A stretch of DNA of 64,000 nt from Podarcis gaigeae. Its lineage: Eukaryota. A model generated the notes under the pieces. That model had not been told where the DNA came from and did not search any database. It worked only from the letters and a program-made list of their open reading frames with translations. The stretch lies in the NCBI GenBank assembly GCA_964106915.2, contig OZ066924.1. One strand, given 5' to 3'. Each line of letters opens with the position of its first letter. Positions within the stretch are counted from its first letter, which is position 1. The translations under genes were made by a program, and so were the position numbers. Positions 7,686 through 39,500 of the stretch are shown in pieces.

Positions 7686-7808
7686 TGTGTCACTTGATAC
7701 CAGCAGATGCTCATTAACCCAGTAACCTTGTAGTTGTATTCTAGAGTTAACTGTAACCCATTCAGGTTTATTCATGTAATCAATCTATCTAGAGAAAACA
7801 CTAGGATG

Positions 7809-7811
<3 letters not shown>

Positions 7812-7844
<33 letters not shown>

Positions 7845-8073
7845 GGTTTTGGTGTCCTCGGGTGTCTTCCCGTGTAAAAGTTGGGGTGTCTGGTGCTTTC
7901 GGCTTCTTGTTACTGGAACTGGCTCTGTTCCAGTAACAAGAAGCCGAAAGCACCAGCCTGAAGATGACGAGTGAGACCTCGTCGAAACGTCGCCTAGACA
8001 CCCCAACTTTTACACGGGAAGACACCCGAGGACACCAAAACCTGCATTCCTGTACCCGTGAAAATCTACGAAA

Positions 8074-8110
<37 letters not shown>
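7812..8110 (+). mobile_element. Non-autonomous PLE pLTR-only insertion with an inverted partial copy, flanked by (TA)n on both sides
   Basis: 7927-8076 is identical to 36481-36630. 7841-7919 is the reverse complement of 7927-7954 joined to 7996-8046. Confidence 0.9.
7951..7998 (+). ncRNA. Second identical hammerhead ribozyme motif
   Basis: CTGAAGA 7958-64, GACGAG/CTCGTC, GAAA 7984-87, CGTC 7988-91; identical to the 36.5-kb copy. Confidence 0.7.
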
Positions 8111-8116
<6 letters not shown>

Positions 8117-8389
8117 GTCATCAGTGAGGTTTGATTGGTTAAATAACAACAAAGCTCCTCCGACGGGTCGGCATCTAAAATGGGATTTGGCTTGAAAGAG
8201 CACCTTTCATATTTAATGTAACTGCAGCAAGACAACTTTTGTCCTCTGTCAAATGGAGCAGGACAGTTCTCCCTTCTGTGAGAAAGGAAATCTGGGAGCC
8301 TTTGAATAATTTACCCTAGCAGCTCACCTCGATTTTTCACAGCACCCCTAGTTATTAGTAGTTTTAGCAGTTCACCTCTGCACATGCTT

Positions 8390-8862
8390 TGTTTGTTGTT
8401 TAGTCGTTTAGTCGTGTCCGACTCTTCATGACCCCATGGACCAGAGCACGCCAGACACTTCTTTCTTCCACTGCCTCCCGCAGTTTGGTCAAACTCATGT
8501 TAGTAGCTTCGAGAATGCTATCCAACCATCTCGTCCTCTGTCGTCCCCTTCTCCTTGTGCCATTCATCTTTCCCAACATCAGGTCTTTTCCAGGGAGTCT
8601 TCTCTTCTCATGAGGTGGCCAAAGTATTGGAGCCTCAGCTTCACGATCTGTCCTTCCAGTGAGCACTCAGGGCTGATTTCCTTCAGAATGGATAGGTTTG
8701 ATCTTCTTGCAGTCCATGGGACTCTCAAGAGTCTCCTCCAGCACCATAATTCAAAAGCATCCATTCTTCGGCGATCAGCCTTCTTTATGGTCCAGCTCTC
8801 CCTTCCATACATCACTACTGGGAAAACCATAGCTTTTACTATACGGACCTTTGTTGGCAAGG
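8390..8862 (-). mobile_element. RTE-BovB LINE 3' fragment
   Basis: KVRIVKAMVFPVVMYG.ESWTIKKADRRR.DAFELWCWRRLLRVPWTARRSN...; (CAA)-type tail; 11-bp TSD TGCACATGCTT (8379-89 / 8863-73). Confidence 0.92.
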
Positions 8863-10180
8863 TGCACATGCTTAATCCAAAGTAAATGTACATAAGATTC
8901 ACTGTTTCCACCTGCCCAGTGGAGATGTGGCTCAGCAAGTTGTGCATGACAGTTTGCAGACCACAATACATGAGAACATAGGAAACCACCTTATACCAGG
9001 TCAGACCATGGGTGAATCCAGCTCAGTATTGTCTACACTGACTGGCAGAGACACTCCAGGTTTTCAGGCAGGAGTCTCTCCCAGTCCTACCTGGAGTTGC
9101 TGGGGACTGATGATGAGACCTTGTGCATGGAAAACAGATGGTCTGTTGCTGAGCTATGGCCATTCCCAAGCACTTCCCTCTATCCTGGATCCTCATTGGG
9201 TTGATGCCAACATTGAAGCAAATGCAACTAACAGAAATATCTCAAAGACACCACGGAAGGGCTCCATCCAAAGGAAGTCACAGCTATCTGATTCCAGAAA
9301 TGAGGAGTGAGCAATAAAGCACATTCCTGTTATTATTACCCAAAGGACAGAGCTTACATCAAAATCAAGCAAAATGATGCACTTGGCTTTGGGCCTGGAA
9401 ACCAGTAATTATAACTACAGTTTTCAGATCTTTTGGTAGCTCAATGAGAAAGGCATTGGAAAGAACAAAGTTCATGCACCATATAAAATCAGCATCTGAC
9501 TGGGGTTCAAGGAACCCAACTCATCTGTCAGAAGCTGTTGTACCAAAAGCCACCCCATTCTCAGAGAAGCACTGATCCAGAAAATGAAAAAGTAATTGAT
9601 GTTGGATACTATGGGATTTGTTGGAGTACAGACTTTGGGTGGGGGAGGTGATGCTGGCAGTTGCATTTTGCAAGCAAATCAAGTACCGAAAGAATATTAT
9701 TTCTCACCAAAAAAAGATACACAGATGTATGTCAATAAATTATTTTAAATCATGTTTTCCATTCCGTGGGTTTTTACAATAAATAAATAAATAAGTAAAT
9801 TTTATTTGTATCCCGCTTTCCCCAGCCAAAGCCAGGCTCAGAGTGGCTAACATCATATAAATAAGGCAATATGCATAATACAATATACAATATGCAAATA
9901 AAATAACATTCAACATTCATTAAAACAATATAGAATAATATTAAATATCAGCATTTCAAAATTAAACAGAAATCCACTCAATAGTTACAATAAGTAATTT
10001 CTAAACTCCACTCAATAAAACAACAGCAAACCACAGTGCACAACATAATACAATACAATACAATACAAAATGAATCCCAGGGCCTGATGAAGTCTCTCCC
10101 CTCACAGTTCTTCCTCTAGGCATAGCTTCCTTTATGGTTATTGTTGATTGGTATCAAAGTGGTAGTGATTTTTTGCCTTA

Positions 10181-10474
10181 TGAAATATACTCGGAGTCGA
10201 GTGTGAATTTCATGCTTTATTCAGTTCATAGTAGCAATGAATGAAACTTCCCCCAAAACATCTGGCTATATATACATTATTTACACAATGGGCCCCTCAT
10301 GATTGGCTAATTCCGGGCTGCTCCTGTAGACCAATCAGGTTGCGGATTCACCTCCTCCAGAAGCCTGATTGCTGATTCACTTCCACCAGGAGCTGGACTG
10401 AGTGGCTCCTGCAGACCAATCAGACTGTTGCATTCTGGATCCTATTGTTCTAGGATTCAGCTCAGTACATAACA
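10181..10474 (-). mobile_element. Solo LTR (Gypsy-like)
   Basis: TG...CA termini; 5-bp TSD CCTTA (10176-80 / 10475-79); minus-strand TATA-like and AATAAA motifs. Confidence 0.8.
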
Positions 10475-13184
10475 CCTTATTTCTCAAAAAACTACAGTGT
10501 AGAAAGACACCAGGGGATTGCACTTTAGAATGAGGGGGGAAAGTAGCAGGCATCATTCGTTATTGAAGAAGCAAGAGAGGGAATGGGGCACATTGAGCTG
10601 TCTTTAGTAGATCAGATCTAGGGGGGAAAGGAACTTGGTCAGATCAGACATAGCCTCAGCAAAATAAACCTGCCAAGCCAGAGATCAAAGATAGAAAACC
10701 AGCCTTTCAGTGGTAAAGCCAAACAGGAGATCAAGAGGCAGACTGTGGTTCAAAGAGGTCTCCTCAAAGGCAGGGAAGTACAAAGGGGAGACCTGAACTT
10801 TGAATGGAGATTCTAGGCTCAAGAGGAAAACAAGCCCCACGACACATAGGAAGAGAGAAACAAGAGGGGCATGATCTAGGTCAGAAACAATAGGAAAACT
10901 TTCTTGTTGTGTGGGCACCATGTAACCAAACAGTTTGCTGTACTCAGAGTAGCCAGTCCTCCCTGGAACTGATGCAGTCCAATCGATTTGGAGAATGTTC
11001 AGATTTTAATATTATAACATTGTATATTTCCAGCTGGCTAACTGAGCCAACTGCATCATACATTTAAGACAGCAACATACCACAGTCATAACTTCCCCCA
11101 AAGAATCCTGGGAACTGTAGTTTGTTAAGGGTGCTGAGAGTTGTTAGGAGACCCCTATTCACACCCACCCACCCCCCAAGCTGCAATTCTCACAGCTGTG
11201 TAACCATCAATTCCTCTTCCCAGGGAAGAATTGTAGCTCTATGGGGGGGAATAGCAGGTTGAATTGGAAAGACAGGCTGCTTTCCTAAAGCTACAGATAC
11301 AGGTCATGCCTGGTGTAATATCCCTGGCAGCTGGAGGCTTCATTAAAAATCTCCTCTCATTAACATGATAACATGTGAAAGATGGAACTGGAAAACATTT
11401 AAATTACTTGAAATAGAGCTATTATTTTTGGTCTTTGTATATATTTGCCTGGAATTGTCCTACTGATGTATGATTCTATTATTTTTATTTTTATTATTAT
11501 GCCTTCACATAAATCTCAAAGCAATGTACAAACATATAATAATAAAGGAACTAAAAATAGGTTTAAAAACAATACAGAAAACAACTATTTGTGCTGTTTT
11601 TAAACATATCATTAAATAGCCAAGACATTTAAAAAAACTCAGAAAACAACCCGTATGCTGGAAAGCCTTATCAAAACAAAAAGTCTTCAATGTTTGCAAA
11701 AACTACAAATAGTGGGTGCCTGTCATGTATCAACAGGGATGCCAAGCCACAAACAGAGGCAAGTACACTGAAAGTGTTGCTCCAAGTTGTTCTGAAGTAG
11801 GATTCTGATATTTGGGGGGCTTTAAGGTCAATATCACCTGCATAATGCAGTGACCTAGTGGGTATATAAGGGATTAGATAGTTTCTTAAATAACTTGTTC
11901 CTGAGCTAAGCTGGCCCTTGTACTACCAGAACATAGAACTTGATCCAGAAGCCAAATGGCAATCCTTATTTACAATATTCAACCCTCTGAAAAGCAACTG
12001 ATGGAGTGCTATCTCTCAAGCAGTTAGTTATGGGAAACTTAAATCATAACCAATTCCAACAAACCCTGTGTCAAAGAACATTTTTGGAGAATTCTTCAAA
12101 AGTCAACAGTCTATTGTAGTGTCTTAATTAATTTAAGATTGTGCTTCGCTGATGTGCGGATAAGGTCTATGGCACCCAACCAATTGGTGTGATTTCTGCT
12201 GGCACTTCTTTCTTTTAATCATCATGTTTGAGTATTTTTGTTAAAGCACAACAGCAGTGACTATCCTTGTTCCATGTTTACTCCTTTTGTATACTGGGAA
12301 AATATTTGGCCCACCATAATCAACTGCCGACTCTCTGAAGATAACAGCCGATGGACTTCAAGCAATCGATCCAAGAGAGGATCAAGAGTCTATTTTCACA
12401 AACCCATTTTAGTCCCATTGGTTGCATATCATTCCCCAGACTAGTGTGAACCAATAACCTGGTCTACATGTTTTAATGGTCAGGGGCCAGTAAATGAGAG
12501 AGCCGCTTGCTCAAGAAAATGAGACGTATACAGTAAAACCTGCCATTGGCGCCAAGTCAACAAGGACAAGTCATTTTCTTATCCTTGTAGCCTAATTCTA
12601 AACATATTTGCTCAGAAGAATCCCCTGCTGAACTCAGAGGAACTTGCAGTGCAGTCCTAATCATGTTTTACCCATGTTCAAAGGGACTTCCACACTAGAG
12701 AAGGACCATACATACCACAGACGCAAAACACACACCCTGATTGCAAAAGGGCCCAGTTTAGACCCCAGAATCTCCAAGCAAGGCTGGAAAGGTCTCTTGC
12801 CTGAACCCGTGGAGAAATGCTGCCAATCAGTGAAGACCAGGCATGGGGAACCTGTGGCCTTTCAGATATTGCTGAACTACAAATCCCATCATCCCTGACT
12901 GCTGTCCATGCTGGCTGGGGTTGATAGGAGTTGGAGTCCATAAACATCAAGTGGGCCATAGGTTCCCTATCCCTAGTACTGTACTGAACTAGCTAGATGG
13001 ATTGATGGCCTGGCTCAGCTTAAAACACTTTCCTATGTTAAGTCTTCTTGGATTCCAGTCCTAAACATGTTTACTTCAAATAAATCCTACTGATCATCCA
13101 GTATTTTTGTTGTTGTTGTTAACATACTTGCTATTCAAATAGCCAAATACTTTTAAAATGCCAGCATAATTTTGGCCTCACTTA

Positions 13185-18770: not shown

Positions 18771-19988
18771 TACTTAAATAAACATTTAATTAATGTACAG
18801 ACTTCTAAATGTACACACTTCTAAATATATTTTATTTAATATACACACTTCTATGCCTTTGGGGATATACTTTGAGCTGACAACCAGAACACAAAACTCA
18901 GAGAGGGCTATTACATTCTGACTTGTACATTAGTCTGGGAGGTGAAAAACAAGTCAGTTCCCTTTCAAAATGCAATCAAAGTGAAATGTTTATTCATTCC
19001 TAAAAGTAGTTCAACTTGGGTGAGGTGCCACATGATTGAGCAGAGAACTGTTTATTAAAGATGGAGGGCACCAGGTTGGGGAAGGTTGATCTAATCCAAT
19101 GTTTGTAGAATGCTCCCCCAAGGAGGTAATCATCTGACTGTGACACTTGGCATTGGATAGTCATTTGCACCAATGAAATTACTAGCAAGGTCAACAGGTG
19201 CATGCAGTTGTGAACCCCACCTTTAAAACTGAGCAATTTCCTCATTTGCTTTATTTAATAACCCAGATTGATTGACTGCAACCTTTGCATTTTCTCCACC
19301 AATAATTATCTCCTCTTCCACAATATTCCTATCCTACAAAAAAAGGTAAACTAGCTGCAACACTGTTAACTACATTCGGGTATACGTTATAACCCTGTGA
19401 TGAAGAGTTGCAGGATTTGGACCTCTGATAAGTCTTAAAAGTCTTTTTATTCCCTGATTTAGTAAAAAAAATGATGCTGTCAAAACAAACAGCAGATTAA
19501 GCTATAAAAGTCTGGAATGCACAGTAGGCATGAGGTTTTAGGAGTTACAGATGTTGTGCATTGAACAGCTGATACATGGATGTAGCTCTATCAAAAAGTT
19601 AAATATTTACAGAATAATTTATTTGGGTATATTAAAGGCTTAATCATTTCTGGAAGGATCTTCCCAACCAAAGAAAGACGATAATGCTAGACATAGACAA
19701 TCATTGACAAAAAAATGAATTTTGTTATATAACAATTGCATCTCTGGGTAGAGCACTAGGGTCCAAGATTCATTCTGCAACAAACATACTTCAGGGAAGA
19801 GCTGTAGCTCAGTGGTAGAAAATCTGTTTTGCATGCAGAAGGTCTCAGGTACAATCCCCAACATCTCCAGGTGTAGGTCTGGGAGAGAACCCTGCCTGAA
19901 ACCTTGGAGTGCTGCTGCCAGTCAGGGTAGAACAAATTGAGCTTGGTAAGACCAGTGTTAAATAAGTTGGAGTTCTTGTTATTAAATA

Positions 19989-34212: not shown

Positions 34213-34636
34213 CTGTATTTTTTGCTCTATAAGACACACCAGACCATAAGGCGCACCTAGTTTTTGGAGGAGGAAAACAAGAAAAAAAATATATTCTGAA
34301 TCCCAGAAGCCAGAACAGCAAGAGGAATCTGGCTTCTGGGATAGCCTCTTGCTGTTCTGGCTTCTGGGATAGCCACGCGAAGCCTCTTCAGGGCAGCAGG
34401 ATGAAGGAAGAGGCTGTGTGTTTCCCCCTGCCTGGAAGAGGCTGTGTGTGGCTAAGGCAGAAGCCAGGGCATCAAGCGGAGCTCCGTTCCTCCTCCCGCT
34501 TCGCAGGAGAGGTGCTTCGCTGAAGGGGCGCTGCACAGCTCTCCCTCTCTGCGCAGCGCCATTCACTCCATAAGACGCACTCACATTTCCCCTTATATTT
34601 TAGGAGGAAAAAAGTGCATCTTGTGGAGAAATACGG
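34213..34636. mobile_element. Same MITE family, longer variant
   Basis: TIR-like ends with TA flanks; internal CTGGCTTCTGGGATAGCC repeats. Confidence 0.8.
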
Positions 34637-34737
34637 TACCTTTAACATATTGTTACAACTGTTATTTTATAGTACAGAGGAACAGGGGCAGCAAGAATCA
34701 CGAGAAAAGTGGTGAAGAGTACCAAACTCCTTCCAGT

Positions 34738-36528
34738 TCACACGTACCAAACTCCTTCCAGTTCATAGAAACAATAAAGAAGCAAAACCTACATCCTAAT
34801 GACCTACTTGTGAGCTTCGATGTTGTATCTCTCTTCACACAAGTGCCCATTAATGAAGCCTTGACAGCTATTCAAAACAAATACAATCCCCCCGAATACA
34901 TCTTGGACCTGACCAACCACTGCCTAACCAACACGTACTTCATCCACAATGGACAAAGATACAAACAGATAGAAGGAGCACCTATGGGATCACCCCTCTC
35001 ACCGGTCATCGCAAACCTGTACATGGAACACTTTGAAACCAATGCTTTAGACAAGTCAGAACACAAACCCAAACTTTGGCTCAGATATGTTGACGACACC
35101 TTTGTAATTTGGCCACACGGGAAGGAAAAACTGGATAGCTTCCTCACACATCTCAACAACTTACACCCCAAAATACAATTCACTATGGAAATAGAAGCCA
35201 ACAACCAACTTCCCTTCCTTGACGTCCTAATCTACAAAAAACCTGATGGCTCCCTAGGACACACTATCTACCAGAAAAAAACACACACCAACCGCTACTT
35301 ACATGCACAATCACACCACCACCCTGCACAAATAAACTCCGTAGCCAAGACTCTCATCTCCAGAACCAAACGCCTGGCTGACAAAGACCACTTGACAACT
35401 GAGTTACAGAATCTCTCAAATGTGTTAATTGCCAATGGATACCAGCAAAACAGGATTACGAAGCTAATCCAAAAGGAAACACCCCCCAAAAACCAAGACA
35501 CAGAAGAAAACAATGGCATGGCCCTCCTTCCTTATATCAAGGGCACTACAGATAAAATTAGCAAAATCCTCCATAAACACAATATCAAAACAGCCTTTTG
35601 CACCAACCAAAAAATAGCCAATATCCTCAGAAACCCCAAGGATAAAATCCAGTTGGAAAACCAAGGGATCTATGAAATACCCTGCAAAGTCTGCCCAGCC
35701 ACGTACATTGGACAAACAAACAGACGAATAAATGCACGTATCGCAGAACACAAGAATGCCGTCAAAAAAGAAGAAAAAACTTCCTCTCTTTTCCAACACA
35801 TGAAAGAAACAGGACACGAAATTAATTTTGCAGATTCCAAATTGCTCTTTAACACGGAACATCACCACAAGAGAATAATCATGGAAGCCATCGAGATAGA
35901 GAAACACCCTCACAACATGAACAAGCGTGACGACACATCCCGCTTGCCAGACATCTGGAAATTAGCCCTCCCCACAAAAACTGACACCAGATCCAGAGGC
36001 ACACAGAACGCCAACACCAATCAACCACACCAGACCCAAACCCAGACCCTCTCCACAGATGAATTACTGACACCATCCAGTAGCCAATCCATGGTGGCAC
36101 CTCCGGATGCTGCACCCCCCTGCAATCCCTACACAGATCTGGCTGACACAAGCCACAAAACCACAGCTCGCCCCTATACACGAAGCCAAGCCAAAGCACA
36201 ACTAAGTGCAATACAGCCATCTTCTCAGGAAAACTCTTCACAAAGTTCAAGAGGTCAAGACACAAAGACTTTAGCAACTAATCCACACCTAATGACCCAC
36301 CTAAGTGGTACTCAGGATATCACTCAAGAAATCACTCAAGGTATCTCTCAAGTAATTAAGGAACAAAAGAAGAAAAGGCACACTAGCCTGGGAACTTCCT
36401 CTCTGCCCAGAACATTGGAGGCTAGACACCACACCCCCTCTACAGTATTTATAGGAACTCAAACATTGAGATCCCGCTCTGTTCCAGTAACAAGAAGCCG
36501 AAAGCACCAGCCTGAAGATGACGAGTGA
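34738..36528 (+). CDS. PLE polyprotein (reverse transcriptase + GIY-YIG endonuclease), N-terminally truncated
   Basis: SFDVVSLFT (34813), GAPMGSPLSP (34975), YVDD (35086-35097), LPFLDV, GIYEIPCKVC..YIGQT (35665-35718), conserved His residues. The ORF-track 'start' (TTG 34621) lies in an adjacent MITE and is not genuine. Confidence 0.9.
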   Translation, partial: SHVPNSFQFIETIKKQNLHPNDLLVSFDVVSLFTQVPINEALTAIQNKYNPPEYILDLTNHCLTNTYFIHNGQRYKQIEGAPMGSPLSPVIANLYMEHFETNALDKSEHKPKLWLRYVDDTFVIWPHGKEKLDSFLTHLNNLHPKIQFTMEIEANNQLPFLDVLIYKKPDGSLGHTIYQKKTHTNRYLHAQSHHHPAQINSVAKTLISRTKRLADKDHLTTELQNLSNVLIANGYQQNRITKLIQKETPPKNQDTEENNGMALLPYIKGTTDKISKILHKHNIKTAFCTNQKIANILRNPKDKIQLENQGIYEIPCKVCPATYIGQTNRRINARIAEHKNAVKKEEKTSSLFQHMKETGHEINFADSKLLFNTEHHHKRIIMEAIEIEKHPHNMNKRDDTSRLPDIWKLALPTKTDTRSRGTQNANTNQPHQTQTQTLSTDELLTPSSSQSMVAPPDAAPPCNPYTDLADTSHKTTARPYTRSQAKAQLSAIQPSSQENSSQSSRGQDTKTLATNPHLMTHLSGTQDITQEITQGISQVIKEQKKKRHTSLGTSSLPRTLEARHHTPSTVFIGTQTLRSRSVPVTRSRKHQPEDDE

Positions 36529-36552
36529 GACCTCGTCGAAACGTCGCCTAGA
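36505..36552 (+). ncRNA. Minimal type-I hammerhead ribozyme motif in the PLE pLTR
   Basis: CTGAAGA (36512-18), T, helix II GACGAG/CTCGTC with loop TGAGAC, GAAA (36538-41), palindromic ACGT mini-helix III, GTC cleavage triplet ending at 36545. Helix I pairing is weak. Confidence 0.7.
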
Positions 36553-39500
36553 CACCCCAACTTTTACACGGGAAGACACCCGAGGACACCAAAACCTGCA
36601 TTCCTGTACCCGTGAAAATCTACGAAAGCATATATATATATATATATATATATATGAATGCCCACTGAGAGTCTATAGAACACAAAGAATGTCCTCAGTA
36701 CTGTAGGACACATGACCACCCTATTGAAGCCCCAGGGTCTCTGAGGCAGAGAGTGGGTGAGAAGGGATGCTGGCTTCTCAGAGACATACCAGGAGCTCAG
36801 TCAAACACAGGACATTGAACTAATACATTGGGTGAATCATCTTTCATAAAAACGATCTCAATAATAGAAGGGTGGCGTGCAAATAGTAAAGAGCAGAGCA
36901 GGGAGGAGCAGTGCGTGTTCTAGCAAAGACAAGGAAACACAGATATTTCCTTTCTTTCTTTTTTCCCGGAGCCCAACCTGTTTTGGTGTAATGGGTTCGA
37001 CCCCTTTGCTTCTGGGAAATGACCAGAGTGAGACCACTTTTGTAAGAAGTGTCTCCAACGCTCACAAACATGGGAGAAACGCCTTGTCTGTTGGCAAAGT
37101 AGGTTTGCTAGGACAGTCTGTGGCTAGCTGCTCTGTGGATTCTGGAAAAGCGCCCATTGGGCTTTTCTAATATGCTGCTATTTATCAGAAGATGATGCCA
37201 TTTTTTCACATGCAAATAGAAACATAAGCGATGCAAATCCCATTGTTTGCAGTGGGATGAGGTGCACATCAAACCTAGTGGCGTGTTTAGGGGGAGCTTA
37301 GCATGAGGCTGCAGTGATTTGGATCTGTGTGGCCAATTTCTCAAAGGGTTGTAAGATAGAACGACTAAACTTCAGACAGCCTACTAAATCTAACTAACAT
37401 GCTGGATGAATTTGAAATAATGCTCGAAAGAAGATACCGTATCATTAAGCTTTTGCTCATGCACTCTGATGTTTGTGAAAGCCTAAGCAATTTGCTAATA
37501 GCTCTAAATCCTGATTCATTTCAGTATTTAGAGGTTGTGTGACATTTCCCACAATTTAATTAGATTATTCTAACCAGAGCAAACTTGTAAAAGTATGGTC
37601 CATCCCAAGCCATGTGGCCTACAGCAATGGCAGGTAATTAAGCTTCACAAAGATACAAAAAATAAAATTAAAAAATGACAATAGCAATGCTGGGAATGAG
37701 CAGTGGCCTTTATATACACCTTAGCTCTCCCCTTCAAATTGAAGCTGGCTTGGGAGTCCATAAAACAAAGACTGAACCTGACTGACCAGTTGCCCTCCAG
37801 CAGGTTTTTTTTTTTTTTTTTTTTTTAGGAAATGAGGCACCATATTTCAACATTTTTTTCTCAAACCAGCAACCAGGTACCTGTTACCAATTTCCAGAGG
37901 TCACTTGTTCAGGAGCCCTTCTTGAGAAAGCAAGATGGGTCACAATTCTGCAACAGCATGGTCTCAATACTGCTGAATGCAATTGCCGATCTACCTTGAA
38001 ATACATGTGCAGAACTGAGGAACATCAAACTGAGTGCCTTATGCACAGATACCTGTTTTTCTCTCTTTCCCTTTCCTCATTGTAGCATGGTCTAATCTTC
38101 CTCTATGAATGATATAGAACAGATACTGAAACTTACAGCCCTCCCCTCCCAAACTCCTGATCTCTCTCATCCATTGGGATAGCTCTGAGGGAATACCCCA
38201 AAATATAAAGCTGGCCTTCATAGTAAAAATGAAATTAGTTATTGTAGTTATTCAATATTAGTCCAATTTTCAACATTTGTATGTTGAAATTCTCCAGATT
38301 TTTGGCTTTTGAAGGTATCGAATATAAAATATTACCAGCTGACAGCTGTCAAATATGAAACACGACTACATGTCAACTATCCTGTCAACATCAATCTTCA
38401 AATACATTTCAAATAATGAAATCAAATGCTACTGGGTTGATTATGCACTATCATTGGGTAACAGTGATCTGGTGCACAGTCAACATGAATCGTGGGTAAG
38501 ATTTAACATTGAGATTTAAAGGTTCAAAGGAAGTTAAAATGACTCTTAACTCAGAATCTGAGATTACATTGAGAAACACTATGAAGAACAAATTAAGTTA
38601 TTAAAAACTCATAAACTTAAGTATGGCTACTGAATAACATTGTTTCCCAAAACTATGAATGGGTCTAGCATCTTTCAGTTTGTTATGTGGCTGTTCTAGA
38701 TTAGCATTTTGTTTTCTACCTTTAGTTTATTTTAATCAAATCAGAATTAGATGGCTGCCTATGGTGCCCACAGAGGTGGATTTCAGGCAGCGTGATTGGT
38801 TTCCCCGCTCTGGGCGCCAAGTTGGGGGTAGGGGCACCGTAGGCAATCACAACTATGTTGTAGTGCACATGCACATGAAGGTGAGAGGGCACCAAATTTT
38901 GGCTTCCCACAGGGCACCACTGATATTTGAAATACCCAAGCCCACCCCTGGGTGAAGACATGACTTTTTACGCAAACAATCCTGATTGTTTCCTTTTCAT
39001 AGATAACCTAGTGTTAAATGTCTGAATCAGCAAAACATATGAAGGATATACCTTGTACCTAAGGAACAAAAGCCAAATATGCTGCTGGCTAATACATCTC
39101 TAATAAAACCGGGGGGGGGGGGCAGTTAAAGAACAACCACTTGCCCTCCCTTTGTACTGCGGTTTTCTATATGCTAACTTTTCTTCCTTCCCGGTGCACC
39201 ACATTTTTTACCATGCTATGACAGCACTAAGCAGATCACTCCATCAGTGCAAGCATTTGTGCTTGCCTGATGGAACTACAGTCCCAGATTGAGCATGGTG
39301 TGGGCTGTTCTCCCGCACAGAATGCTGAGCCAAGGGGGTGCATAACACAATAGTAAAACCTATATTTATACGGGTACATACAGAGAAGATCCATAAACAA
39401 GCAACTGTACCAAAATGAATTATTGTGAAAATAATAAATATTTAGGTGGAGGGGCACCAAATTTTGTCATCGCTCAGGGCATCTTATTACGCAAGTGCAC

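What the first reader, a model, noticed from the sequence alone, without database searches (positions are those of the whole stretch)
7812..8110. Palindromic mini-Penelope whose inverted arm lacks exactly the hammerhead ribozyme
Seen: the structure is (TA)n - inverted arm (7841-7919) - 7-nt spacer - forward pLTR (7927-8076) - (TA)n. The inverted arm is the reverse complement of the forward arm except for two deletions. One is the 41 nt (7955-7995) holding the whole hammerhead core, bounded by an AG microhomology. The other is the last ~30 nt, bounded by GCAT. A transcript would fold into a ~79-bp duplex with the ribozyme extruded as a single-stranded bulge, free to fold, whereas a full inverted copy would mask it. 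Established: PLEs form inverted pLTR structures, carry a short 3' tail on only one pLTR, and encode minimal hammerheads. Inference: either a one-off RT skip over the helix-II hairpin, or a retrozyme-like non-autonomous unit mobilised by the PLE at 34.7 kb.
Basis: partly seen in the sequence, partly recalled or inferred. Interest (0 to 1): 0.8.

Follow-up and report, generated by a model that had tools for sequence, protein, structure and literature searches.

The report
Truncated back-to-back Penelope insertion, one-arm deletion
This is a very recent, dead-on-arrival insertion of the last 155 bases of a common lizard Penelope-like jumping gene, pasted back-to-back with a partial mirror copy of itself; the mirror copy's missing ribozyme is most likely a one-off copying skip, not a new kind of mobile element.

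Summary
(TA)n, an inverted arm (7840-7919), a 7-nt spacer, a forward arm (7922-8076) and (TA)n are all present. The arms match perfectly except that the inverted arm lacks 41 nt (AG microhomology) holding the whole minimal hammerhead, and the last 29 nt.

The forward arm is identical to the 3' end of the 5'-truncated RT/GIY-YIG Penelope-like copy at 34.7-36.6 kb. The missing 29 nt is not a deletion. It is the known PLE "tail": many other copies also end at 8047 followed by (AT)n. This matches the two internal reverse-transcription start sites shown for the Anolis element PAc.

The layout is generic. A Podarcis muralis locus carries a 4.6-kb palindrome of the same family with a 5-nt spacer, one tail, (TA)n flanks and hammerheads in both arms. 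Earlier notes of this scan list many such palindromes in this genome.

Two other lizard samples carry the empty site, so the insertion is very young. No evidence shows the 41-nt-deleted form elsewhere, though the test was weak. The unit has one hammerhead only, and published single minimal hammerheads are inactive. It also lacks the template region PAc needs.

Best reading: a one-off polymerase skip over the hammerhead during integration. Low interest.

The parts
7812..7841 (.). Left (TA)15 tract, part of the target microsatellite
   Evidence: Empty-site contigs of X4 and X14 have only 36-38 nt between 7801 and 8122, about (TA)8-9.
7840..7919 (-). Inverted arm. It is the reverse complement of 7927-7956 plus 7996-8047. 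It is tail-less: its outer end ATGC is GCAT of 8044-8047.
   Evidence: I1, I7: 100% complementary.
7890..7891 (-). Junction of the 41-nt deletion (CT = AG microhomology)
   Evidence: Overlap of the two perfect repeat blocks.
7920..7926 (.). 7-nt spacer or loop. TG is untemplated filler. GCTCT is the last 5 nt of the forward copy.
   Evidence: parent 36476-36480 = GCTCT. Loose ends before 7922 continue into the PLE body.
7922..8076 (+). Forward arm: the last 155 nt of the PLE insertion unit, identical to 36476-36630
   Evidence: 150/150 identical.
7958..7991 (+). Minimal type-I hammerhead. It reads CUGAAGA, an extra U, helix II GACGAG/CUCGUC (6 bp, 6-nt loop), GAAA, then palindromic ACGU and C17. 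The predicted cut is after C7991.
   Evidence: The features match those listed in PMC4209133. The layout matches PAc.
7964..8076 (+). Start of the PLE ORF. The ATG lies in the hammerhead core, and 37 codons stay open to the end of the insertion.
   Evidence: Same arrangement as PAc, where the ORF begins at stem II.
8048..8076 (+). 29-nt 'tail', present on the forward arm only. It spans ORF nt +85 to +113.
   Evidence: In one search, 24, 19 and 3 contigs and 19 RNA reads end at 8047 followed by (AT)n. The PAc tail is roughly nt 85-119, between two RT start sites.
8077..8111 (.). Right (TA)n tract
34719..36630 (+). 5'-truncated PLE copy of the same family. It has a partial RT, GIY-YIG, a hammerhead at 36512-36545 and the tail, and is followed by (TA)13.
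   Evidence: RVT_1 3e-13; GIY-YIG 5e-4. It is 93% identical to a Podarcis muralis protein.

Best explanation
A single, very recent retrotransposition event of an abundant lizard (Podarcis-type) Penelope/Poseidon-like element landed in a short (TA)n microsatellite.

Proposed sequence of events:
1. First-strand cDNA started at the downstream internal RT start site (ORF nt +113, position 8076). It was abandoned after only 155 nt, at 7922.
2. Two untemplated bases were added.
3. Synthesis turned back on the nascent strand (fold-back template switch) and produced the mirror arm.
4. The mirror arm ends at the family's other regular terminus (+84, position 8047).
5. While the mirror arm was copied, the polymerase skipped 41 nt across the base of the hammerhead domain and re-paired through a 2-nt AG microhomology.

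The product is a dead-on-arrival fragment. It is not a mobile unit and not an evolved way of displaying the ribozyme.

Shown: the anatomy, the identity to the PLE end, the generic architecture, the regular 8047 terminus and the empty sites.

Inferred: fold-back rather than twin priming, and that the skip happened at integration.
For: Source of the arms:
- Identity to the 3' end of the RT/GIY-YIG copy.

The layout is generic for the family:
- P. muralis locus L001 has a 4.6-kb palindrome with a 5-nt spacer, a tail on one arm only, (TA)n on both sides and hammerheads in both arms.
- The contigs hold other head-to-head joints, including a spacer-less one at 7880->8008.

The two ends are regular termini:
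- 8047 followed by (AT)n recurs in dozens of contigs.
- 8047 and 8076 sit where PAc's two RT start sites sit.
- PAc nicks and extends both target strands and prefers AT-rich DNA (PMC11167929).

Fold-back rather than independent events:
- In both the 121-nt example and the 2.3-kb example the two arms stop within 5 nt of each other. Two independent truncations would not give this.

The insertion is very young:
- The arms show 0 differences from each other or from the parent copy.
- X4 and X14 carry the empty site; X4's flanks have 0 differences.

Geometry of the skip:
- Its boundaries sit 0-2 nt and 2-4 nt outside the 2-bp stem I (G7956-C7993, C7957-G7992).

Rarity of the junction:
- Depth in the bin over the junction is at most about 5-16 single-copy equivalents, against about 10^4 for the family. 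In X14 that depth can be accounted for by one contig, on my estimate of where it begins.
Against: - Uniqueness of the junction could not be tested properly. A contig carrying the deletion would be laid silently on the inverted arm, and contigs drop rare variants.
- The local fold of the hammerhead region is thermodynamically unremarkable: RNA z = -0.86, DNA z = -0.42. A structure-guided skip therefore needs the tertiary or protein-assisted fold.
- A random 41-nt deletion in the 121-nt arm would include the 34-nt core 10% of the time, so the coincidence is only suggestive.
- Fold-back does not by itself explain why the mirror arm stops at 8047.
- Presence of the insertion in reads of the source individual was not directly shown.
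Confidence: 0.65

Rival explanations
1. Post-integration deletion. The insertion was first a perfect palindrome with about 121-bp arms, like others in this genome. It then lost 41 bp from one arm through microhomology-mediated end joining or replication slippage, for example after hairpin or cruciform processing. That loss made the palindrome less symmetric and more stable.
For: - Perfect palindromes of this family with both hammerheads exist (L001; unchecked earlier notes).
- Long perfect palindromes are known to be unstable (general knowledge).
- A 2-nt microhomology fits end joining.
Against: - The insertion is extremely young: the arms have no substitutions and other samples carry the empty site. 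That leaves little time for a second event.
- The deletion is internal to one arm and spares the palindrome centre, which is not the usual palindrome-driven pattern (general knowledge).
- Template switching is already intrinsic to how these structures form.
Confidence: 0.2
2. Retrozyme-like non-autonomous unit. The asymmetric palindrome is a functional, transcribed mini-element. Its hairpin presents a free hammerhead, and PLE proteins mobilise it in trans.
For: - In silico the hairpin does extrude the hammerhead core with helix II formed.
- PLE-derived non-autonomous hammerhead elements (retrozymes) are known in vertebrates (bioRxiv 10.64898/2026.07.22.740005).
- Family RNA is expressed from both strands.
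Against: - There is only one hammerhead, so no unit can be excised.
- Single minimal hammerheads showed no cleavage in vitro (PMC4209133), and PAc's needs the element's protein (PMC11167929).
- The unit holds ORF nt 1-113 only, while PAc needs 1-172 as template.
- There is no second copy in the window. Organisms B and G carry the empty site.
- In X23 there are no RNA reads on the flanks or the inverted arm, and no pile-up of read ends at the predicted cut site.
- Family RNA carries ADAR-type changes, which suggests that double-stranded RNA from this family is edited in vivo.
- The nearby PLE copy is 5'-truncated.
Confidence: 0.04
3. Run-off on a self-cleaved RNA. The template had been cut by the hammerhead. 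The polymerase reached the new 5' end and jumped to the upstream fragment, losing the ribozyme.
For: - The deletion's 3' boundary (7995-7997) lies only 4-6 nt from the predicted cut (7991/7992).
- RTs are known to jump at template ends (general knowledge).
Against: - The boundaries do not coincide with the cut site.
- A jump using the available GCCT repeat (7956-59 / 7992-95) would give a 36-nt deletion, which is not what is seen.
- No RNA ends at the cut site, either here or in Anolis.
- HHR mutants do not change PAc insertion products.
Confidence: 0.05
4. Assembly artefact. The palindrome, or the 41-nt gap in one arm, is a consensus or chimeric-read error.
For: - Palindromes and (TA)n tracts are hard to assemble (Craig et al. 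2021 note this for PLEs).
- I could not see reads of the source individual across the junction.
Against: - The same architecture occurs in an independent public assembly (L001).
- In the best-holding run (X1) the flank contigs break in the TA tract, as expected if the tracts are long, whereas the contigs of X4 and X14 run straight through a short tract.
- A clean 41-nt loss at a microhomology is not a typical polishing error.
Confidence: 0.04

Closest known systems
Head-to-head (inverted, 5'-truncated) insertions of Penelope-like elements with a one-sided 30-40-bp tail (Evgen'ev & Arkhipova 2005; Arkhipova 2006; Craig et al. 2021, PMC8557442)
   Same: An inverted 5'-truncated copy abuts the direct copy. 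The tail is on one end only. The hammerhead lies in the terminal repeat. The target is a microsatellite or AT-rich site.
   Different: The size is extremely small (155 + 80 nt). The inverted copy also has an internal 41-nt deletion that removes the hammerhead.
PAc (Poseidon_Ac) of Anolis carolinensis: in vitro integration properties (Frangieh et al. 2024, PMC11167929)
   Same: The ORF's ATG lies inside the hammerhead core, with the cut about 26 nt downstream. The two termini (+84 and +113 here) correspond to PAc's two internal RT start sites that bound the tail (about nt 85-119). PAc also prefers AT-rich targets and extends both strands.
   Different: It is a different family: the nucleotide sequence of the hammerhead and ORF start differs. 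I estimate the protein at roughly 50% similar, by eye only. Nothing has been tested biochemically for the Podarcis-type element.
Minimal hammerheads of metazoan PLEs (Cervera & de la Pena 2014, PMC4209133)
   Same: [quoted passage not shown] That paper also reports pairs of motifs on opposite strands 100-700 bp apart.
   Different: Helix I is only 2 bp here, as in the D. virilis variant, against 4-5 bp in most. Here one of the two opposed motifs is deleted.
Non-LTR retrozymes of animals (Cervera & de la Pena 2020, cited from memory; Li, Clavereau & Pollet 2026 preprint)
   Same: Short, non-coding, hammerhead-bearing sequence derived from a PLE terminal region.
   Different: Retrozymes are direct tandem repeats with at least two hammerheads that excise a monomer or circular RNA. 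This unit is a palindrome with a single hammerhead and no sign of being a family.
Twin priming inversions of LINE-1 and RT template-switch deletions at structured RNA (Ostertag & Kazazian 2001; Cocquet et al. 2006; both from memory)
   Same: Inversions, truncations and microhomology-bounded internal deletions arise as by-products of target-primed reverse transcription.
   Different: L1 inversions join different parts of the RNA. Here both arms copy the same part and end within 5 nt of each other, which fits fold-back better.

Membership tests
EN+ Penelope-like element (Penelope/Poseidon type) insertion | Source family encodes an RT followed by a C-terminal GIY-YIG endonuclease | tested here: met
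   ORF 34621-36528 hits RVT_1 (3e-13) and GIY-YIG (5e-4, just under the Pfam cut-off). It is 93% identical to a P. muralis protein carrying RVT_1 plus PLE-type domains. The forward arm is identical to that copy's 3' end.
EN+ Penelope-like element (Penelope/Poseidon type) insertion | Inverted 5'-truncated partner copy, and a 30-40-bp tail on one end only | tested here: met
   the 29-nt tail is on the forward arm only. The same holds in L001. 8047 is a recurrent terminus.
EN+ Penelope-like element (Penelope/Poseidon type) insertion | AT-rich or microsatellite target | tested here: met
   (TA)n flanks this insertion, the 34.7-kb copy (3' side) and L001. The empty site is about (TA)8-9.
Minimal PLE hammerhead (min-HHR) | Conserved core boxes, an extra nt at 9/10.1, a G10.1-C11.1 pair, and palindromic 15.2-16.2 | tested here: met
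   Sequence 7958-7991. My descriptor scan hits only the two PLE sites; shuffles gave a mean of 0.005. The feature list comes from PMC4209133.
Minimal PLE hammerhead (min-HHR) | Helix I of 4-5 bp | tested here: not met
   Only C7957-G7992 and G7956-C7993 pair (one search shows a 2-bp closing stem). A 2-bp helix I is described for the D. virilis variant.
Minimal PLE hammerhead (min-HHR) | Self-cleavage at C17 | tested here: inconclusive
   Family RNA reads show no pile-up of ends at 7991/7992 (table 6), as reported for Anolis. Rfam's hammerhead models give no hit at E<=10.
Non-LTR retrozyme | Two or more hammerheads in direct (tandem) orientation delimiting an excisable monomer | tested here: not met
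   The unit has a single hammerhead. The second arm is inverted and lacks it.
Non-LTR retrozyme | Dispersed multi-copy family of the same unit | tested here: inconclusive
   There is no second copy in the window. Two other samples carry the empty site. Depth over the junction is at most about 5-16 copy equivalents, and in X14 it can be accounted for by one unrelated contig, on my estimate of where that contig begins. The full assembly could not be searched.
MITE / DNA transposon with TA target duplication | Terminal inverted repeats of a DNA transposon, symmetric ends | tested here: not met
   The arms are the 3' end of a retroelement ORF/UTR. The ends are asymmetric because only one carries the tail.

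The most novel reading that the evidence does not exclude
The 41-nt loss is a footprint of how PLEs integrate. The polymerase that makes the mirror arm cannot read through the folded, protein-held hammerhead and hops across its base.

Suppose a census showed independent deletions that precisely remove the hammerhead, recurring only on the tail-less arm. That would give in vivo evidence for two things: the order of strand synthesis (fold-back second strand), and the hammerhead being folded in the integration complex. Both are open points in PLE biology.
Probability: 0.15. Interest if true: 0.5.

Novelty: new member of a known kind. Interest (0 to 1): 0.2.

Why it matters
On its own it matters little. 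It is one more truncated insertion of an abundant, recently active lizard Penelope-like family.

Its modest value is as a data point on an unsolved mechanism. Three features constrain models of PLE integration:
- The near-equal arm ends.
- The 5-7-nt spacers.
- The rule that one arm carries the tail and the other stops at the second RT start site.

The literature still calls this integration cycle undefined (Craig et al. 2021). A deletion that neatly removes the ribozyme hints that the hammerhead domain is an obstacle to the copying polymerase.

Tried and rejected
- **Rfam.** At gathering and at E<=10 there was no hammerhead hit, only spurious miRNA and sok hits driven by the hairpin. This says nothing against a minimal hammerhead.
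- **Splicing as the cause of the 41-nt loss.** None of the three equivalent deletion frames has GT/GC...AG ends on either strand, and 41 nt is too short (from the sequence).
- **MITE reading.** Rejected, because the arms are retroelement sequence.
- **Junction search in metagenome contigs.** It gave 0 hits, and the intact hammerhead as a control also gave 0. The collection lacks this family, so the result is uninformative.
- **The search of earlier findings by sequence and by place near the locus.** Both were blank.
- **PAc supplement search for this family's strings.** No match. Reading the GenBank file showed that PAc is a different family with the same layout.
- **N-terminus check through P0001.** I tried to confirm the family's ORF N-terminus this way, but that gene model is chimeric and lacks it.
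- **Read laying for the 41-nt skip.** No such joint was listed. The test is blind, because a deleted copy fits the inverted arm perfectly.
- **PAc protein alignment.** I did not align the PAc protein to this ORF, because that would have required typing a long sequence.

Full report
**1. Observation**

The layout runs as follows:
- (TA)15 at 7812-7841.
- An inverted arm at 7840-7919.
- A 7-nt spacer, TGGCTCT, at 7920-7926.
- A forward arm reaching 8076.
- (TA)n to 8111.

Two perfect inverted-repeat blocks make up the arms: 52 nt (7840-7891 / 7996-8047) and 30 nt (7890-7919 / 7927-7956). They overlap by the dinucleotide CT, which is AG on the other strand. The inverted arm therefore lacks exactly 41 nt (7955-7995, equivalently 7957-7997). 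It also lacks the last 29 nt of the forward arm (8048-8076).

The deleted 41 nt hold the entire hammerhead core, 7958-7991. The core reads CUGAAGA, an extra U, helix II GACGAG/CUCGUC with a 6-nt loop, GAAA, then ACGU and C17. A descriptor scan of my own finds this motif only at 7958 and 36512 in the window. It finds 0.005 times per shuffled window.

As RNA, 7840-8076 folds into an 80-bp hairpin with a 39-nt bulge in which helix II forms (-171 kcal/mol, z = -20).

There are two corrections. First, GCTCT of the spacer continues the parent sequence, so the forward copy begins at 7922 and only TG is filler. Second, the "second deletion" is not a deletion (section 3).

**2. What the arms are**

The forward arm is 100% identical to 36481-36630. 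That is the 3' end of a copy whose ORF (34621-36528) carries a partial reverse transcriptase and a GIY-YIG endonuclease. That copy is also followed by (TA)n.

The ORF is 93% identical to a Podarcis muralis protein. The genome is therefore a lacertid lizard, and the element is a Penelope/Poseidon-type PLE.

The 34.7-kb copy is itself 5'-truncated. It starts within the RT, near 34719-34744, so it cannot be the mobiliser.

**3. Comparison with the published Anolis element PAc** (Frangieh et al. 2024, PMC11167929)

PAc belongs to a different sequence family but has the same layout:
- The ORF's ATG sits in the hammerhead core at the start of stem II. Here the ATG is at 7964-7966, and 37 codons stay open to 8076.
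- The cut site lies about 26 nt downstream. Here that is after C7991.
- Reverse transcription starts at two internal sites. These bound the roughly 34-nt "tail" at nt 85-119 of the ORF.

In this locus 8047 is +84 and 8076 is +113. The read data agree. In one search, 24, 19 and 3 contigs of three DNA runs and 19 RNA reads end at exactly 8047 followed by (AT)n. The inverted arm therefore simply ends at the family's tail-less terminus, as Craig et al. 2021 describe for PLEs in general.

**4. The architecture is generic**

I fetched the P. muralis locus that encodes the best protein hit (L001). It holds a 4.6-kb palindrome of the same family:
- Arms at 8422-10733 and 10739-13048.
- A 5-nt spacer, CACCA.
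- The reverse-complemented tail on the left arm only.
- A right arm ending ...CCTGCAT followed by (AT)n.
- (TA)n on both sides.
- An intact hammerhead in both arms.

The contigs laid on the window also hold other head-to-head joints. One is spacer-less, at 7880->8008. They further show 5' truncations abutting (TA)n at 7926, 7928, 7986, 7987 and 8011.

Earlier notes of this scan list many perfect palindromes of 123 bp to 2.3 kb in the same genome. I used them as leads only. Cervera & de la Pena 2014 already reported opposed minimal hammerheads 100-700 bp apart.

Only the 41-nt deletion is peculiar to this locus.

**5. Age and copy number**

Contigs of run X4 (organism B; flanks with 0 differences) and X14 (organism G) join 7801 to 8122 with only 36-38 nt between. 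That is an empty site with about (TA)8-9. In the best-holding run, X1, the flank contigs break in the TA tract.

The arms show no substitutions, so the insertion is very young.

Summed word depth over the family's 3' end is about 10^4 times the single-copy flank depth, and it falls steeply towards 7929. The tool warns that this is no copy number. I read it only as showing that tiny 5'-truncated copies are the norm.

The bin over the deletion junction (7890-7908) holds at most about 5-16 single-copy equivalents. In X14 that depth can be accounted for by one contig with an extra A after 7921, on my estimate of where that contig begins. A deleted subfamily of any size is therefore unlikely.

Strict uniqueness could not be tested. 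A contig carrying the deletion would lie on the inverted arm as a perfect match. The metagenome collection does not hold this family at all.

**6. Mechanism**

In both the 121-nt example and the 2.3-kb example the two arms stop within 5 nt of each other, around a 5-7-nt loop. Two independent target-primed events would not give this. The pattern fits one cDNA that turns back on itself (fold-back template switch). This is inference. The literature held here offers no settled model.

The skip removes the two stem-I pairs (G7956-C7993, C7957-G7992). Its boundaries lie 0-2 nt and 2-4 nt outside those pairs. That places them at the base of the three-way junction, where donor and acceptor AG are juxtaposed. 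This is the geometry expected for a polymerase hopping over a structured domain.

Several caveats apply:
- The local fold is not unusually stable: RNA z = -0.86, DNA z = -0.42.
- A random 41-nt deletion would contain the core 10% of the time.
- A later end-joining deletion cannot be excluded.
- A run-off on self-cleaved RNA does not fit, because the boundary misses the cut by 4-6 nt and the available GCCT repeat was not used.
- Splicing does not fit, because there are no splice-site dinucleotides.

**7. Function**

Nothing supports a retrozyme-like or ribozyme-display role:
- The unit has one hammerhead.
- Single minimal hammerheads gave no cleavage in vitro.
- PAc's hammerhead cuts only with the element's protein, and is dispensable for insertion in vitro.
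- PAc needs ORF nt 1-172 as template, and only 1-113 are present here.
- In run X23 no RNA reads lie on the flanks or the inverted arm, and no read ends pile up at the cut site. X14's contig shows that organism G can carry the empty site, so this says little about this locus itself.

**8. Side observation**

Family RNA in X23 comes from both strands at similar levels. It carries strand-specific changes: A>G at 19 places and T>C at 13, against 3 of other kinds. At single sites these reach up to half of the reads, while the DNA contigs of X14 lack them (0 at nearly every listed site).

This is the signature of ADAR-type hyper-editing of double-stranded RNA. It suggests that double-stranded RNA from this family is edited in vivo.

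**9. Verdict**

The kind of element is already known, and this scan has met the same kind of palindrome repeatedly in this genome. Interest is low.

Noticed in passing
window 7929-8024 (family-level, run X23): RNA reads of this PLE family come from both strands at similar depth. They carry strand-specific A>G changes (reads whose first mate is on -) and T>C changes (first mate on +): 32 places in all, reaching up to about 50% at single sites. DNA contigs of the same species label lack them (0 at nearly every listed site). This looks like ADAR-type hyper-editing of double-stranded RNA made by inverted or bidirectionally transcribed copies.
   Followed up: partly
window 7954-7957: Two groups of RNA reads (8 and 7 reads, agreement 1.0) join unrelated sequence to the element at exactly 7955 and 7957. 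That is right after CACCAG, at the 5' edge of the hammerhead. It may be a 3' splice acceptor (CAG|) used in chimeric or spliced transcripts. In D. virilis Penelope an intron ends at the 5' edge of helix I (PMC4209133). The joined sequences are not in the window.
   Followed up: partly
window 7812-7841 and 8077-8111: The filled allele has about 30 + 35 nt of TA, whereas the empty-site contigs have only about 16-18 nt. Either a longer allele was hit, or the whole tract was duplicated and extended during integration.
   Followed up: no
L001:8346-13091 (Podarcis muralis OZ076968.1): A near-perfect 4.6-kb head-to-head palindrome of the same PLE family lies in a (TA)n tract. The NCBI gene model LOC144326219 (P0001) is built over it with a foreign N-terminus, so it is probably a chimeric annotation of transposon ORFs.
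   Followed up: partly
window 34719-34765: A 22-nt sequence (GTACCAAACTCCTTCCAGTTCA) is duplicated 25 nt apart at the 5' truncation point of the 34.7-kb PLE copy, giving a messy 5' junction. This copy has no inverted partner.
   Followed up: no
window 34300-34480: Nested inverted repeats (26 nt at 100%, 57 nt at 75%) lie just upstream of the PLE copy. They look like a separate hairpin-forming repeat, possibly SINE-like.
   Followed up: no
window 19798-19869: A tRNA-like sequence sits barely above the Rfam gathering score (30.3 vs 29 bits) with several non-canonical pairs. It is probably the head of a tRNA-derived SINE or a pseudogene.
   Followed up: no
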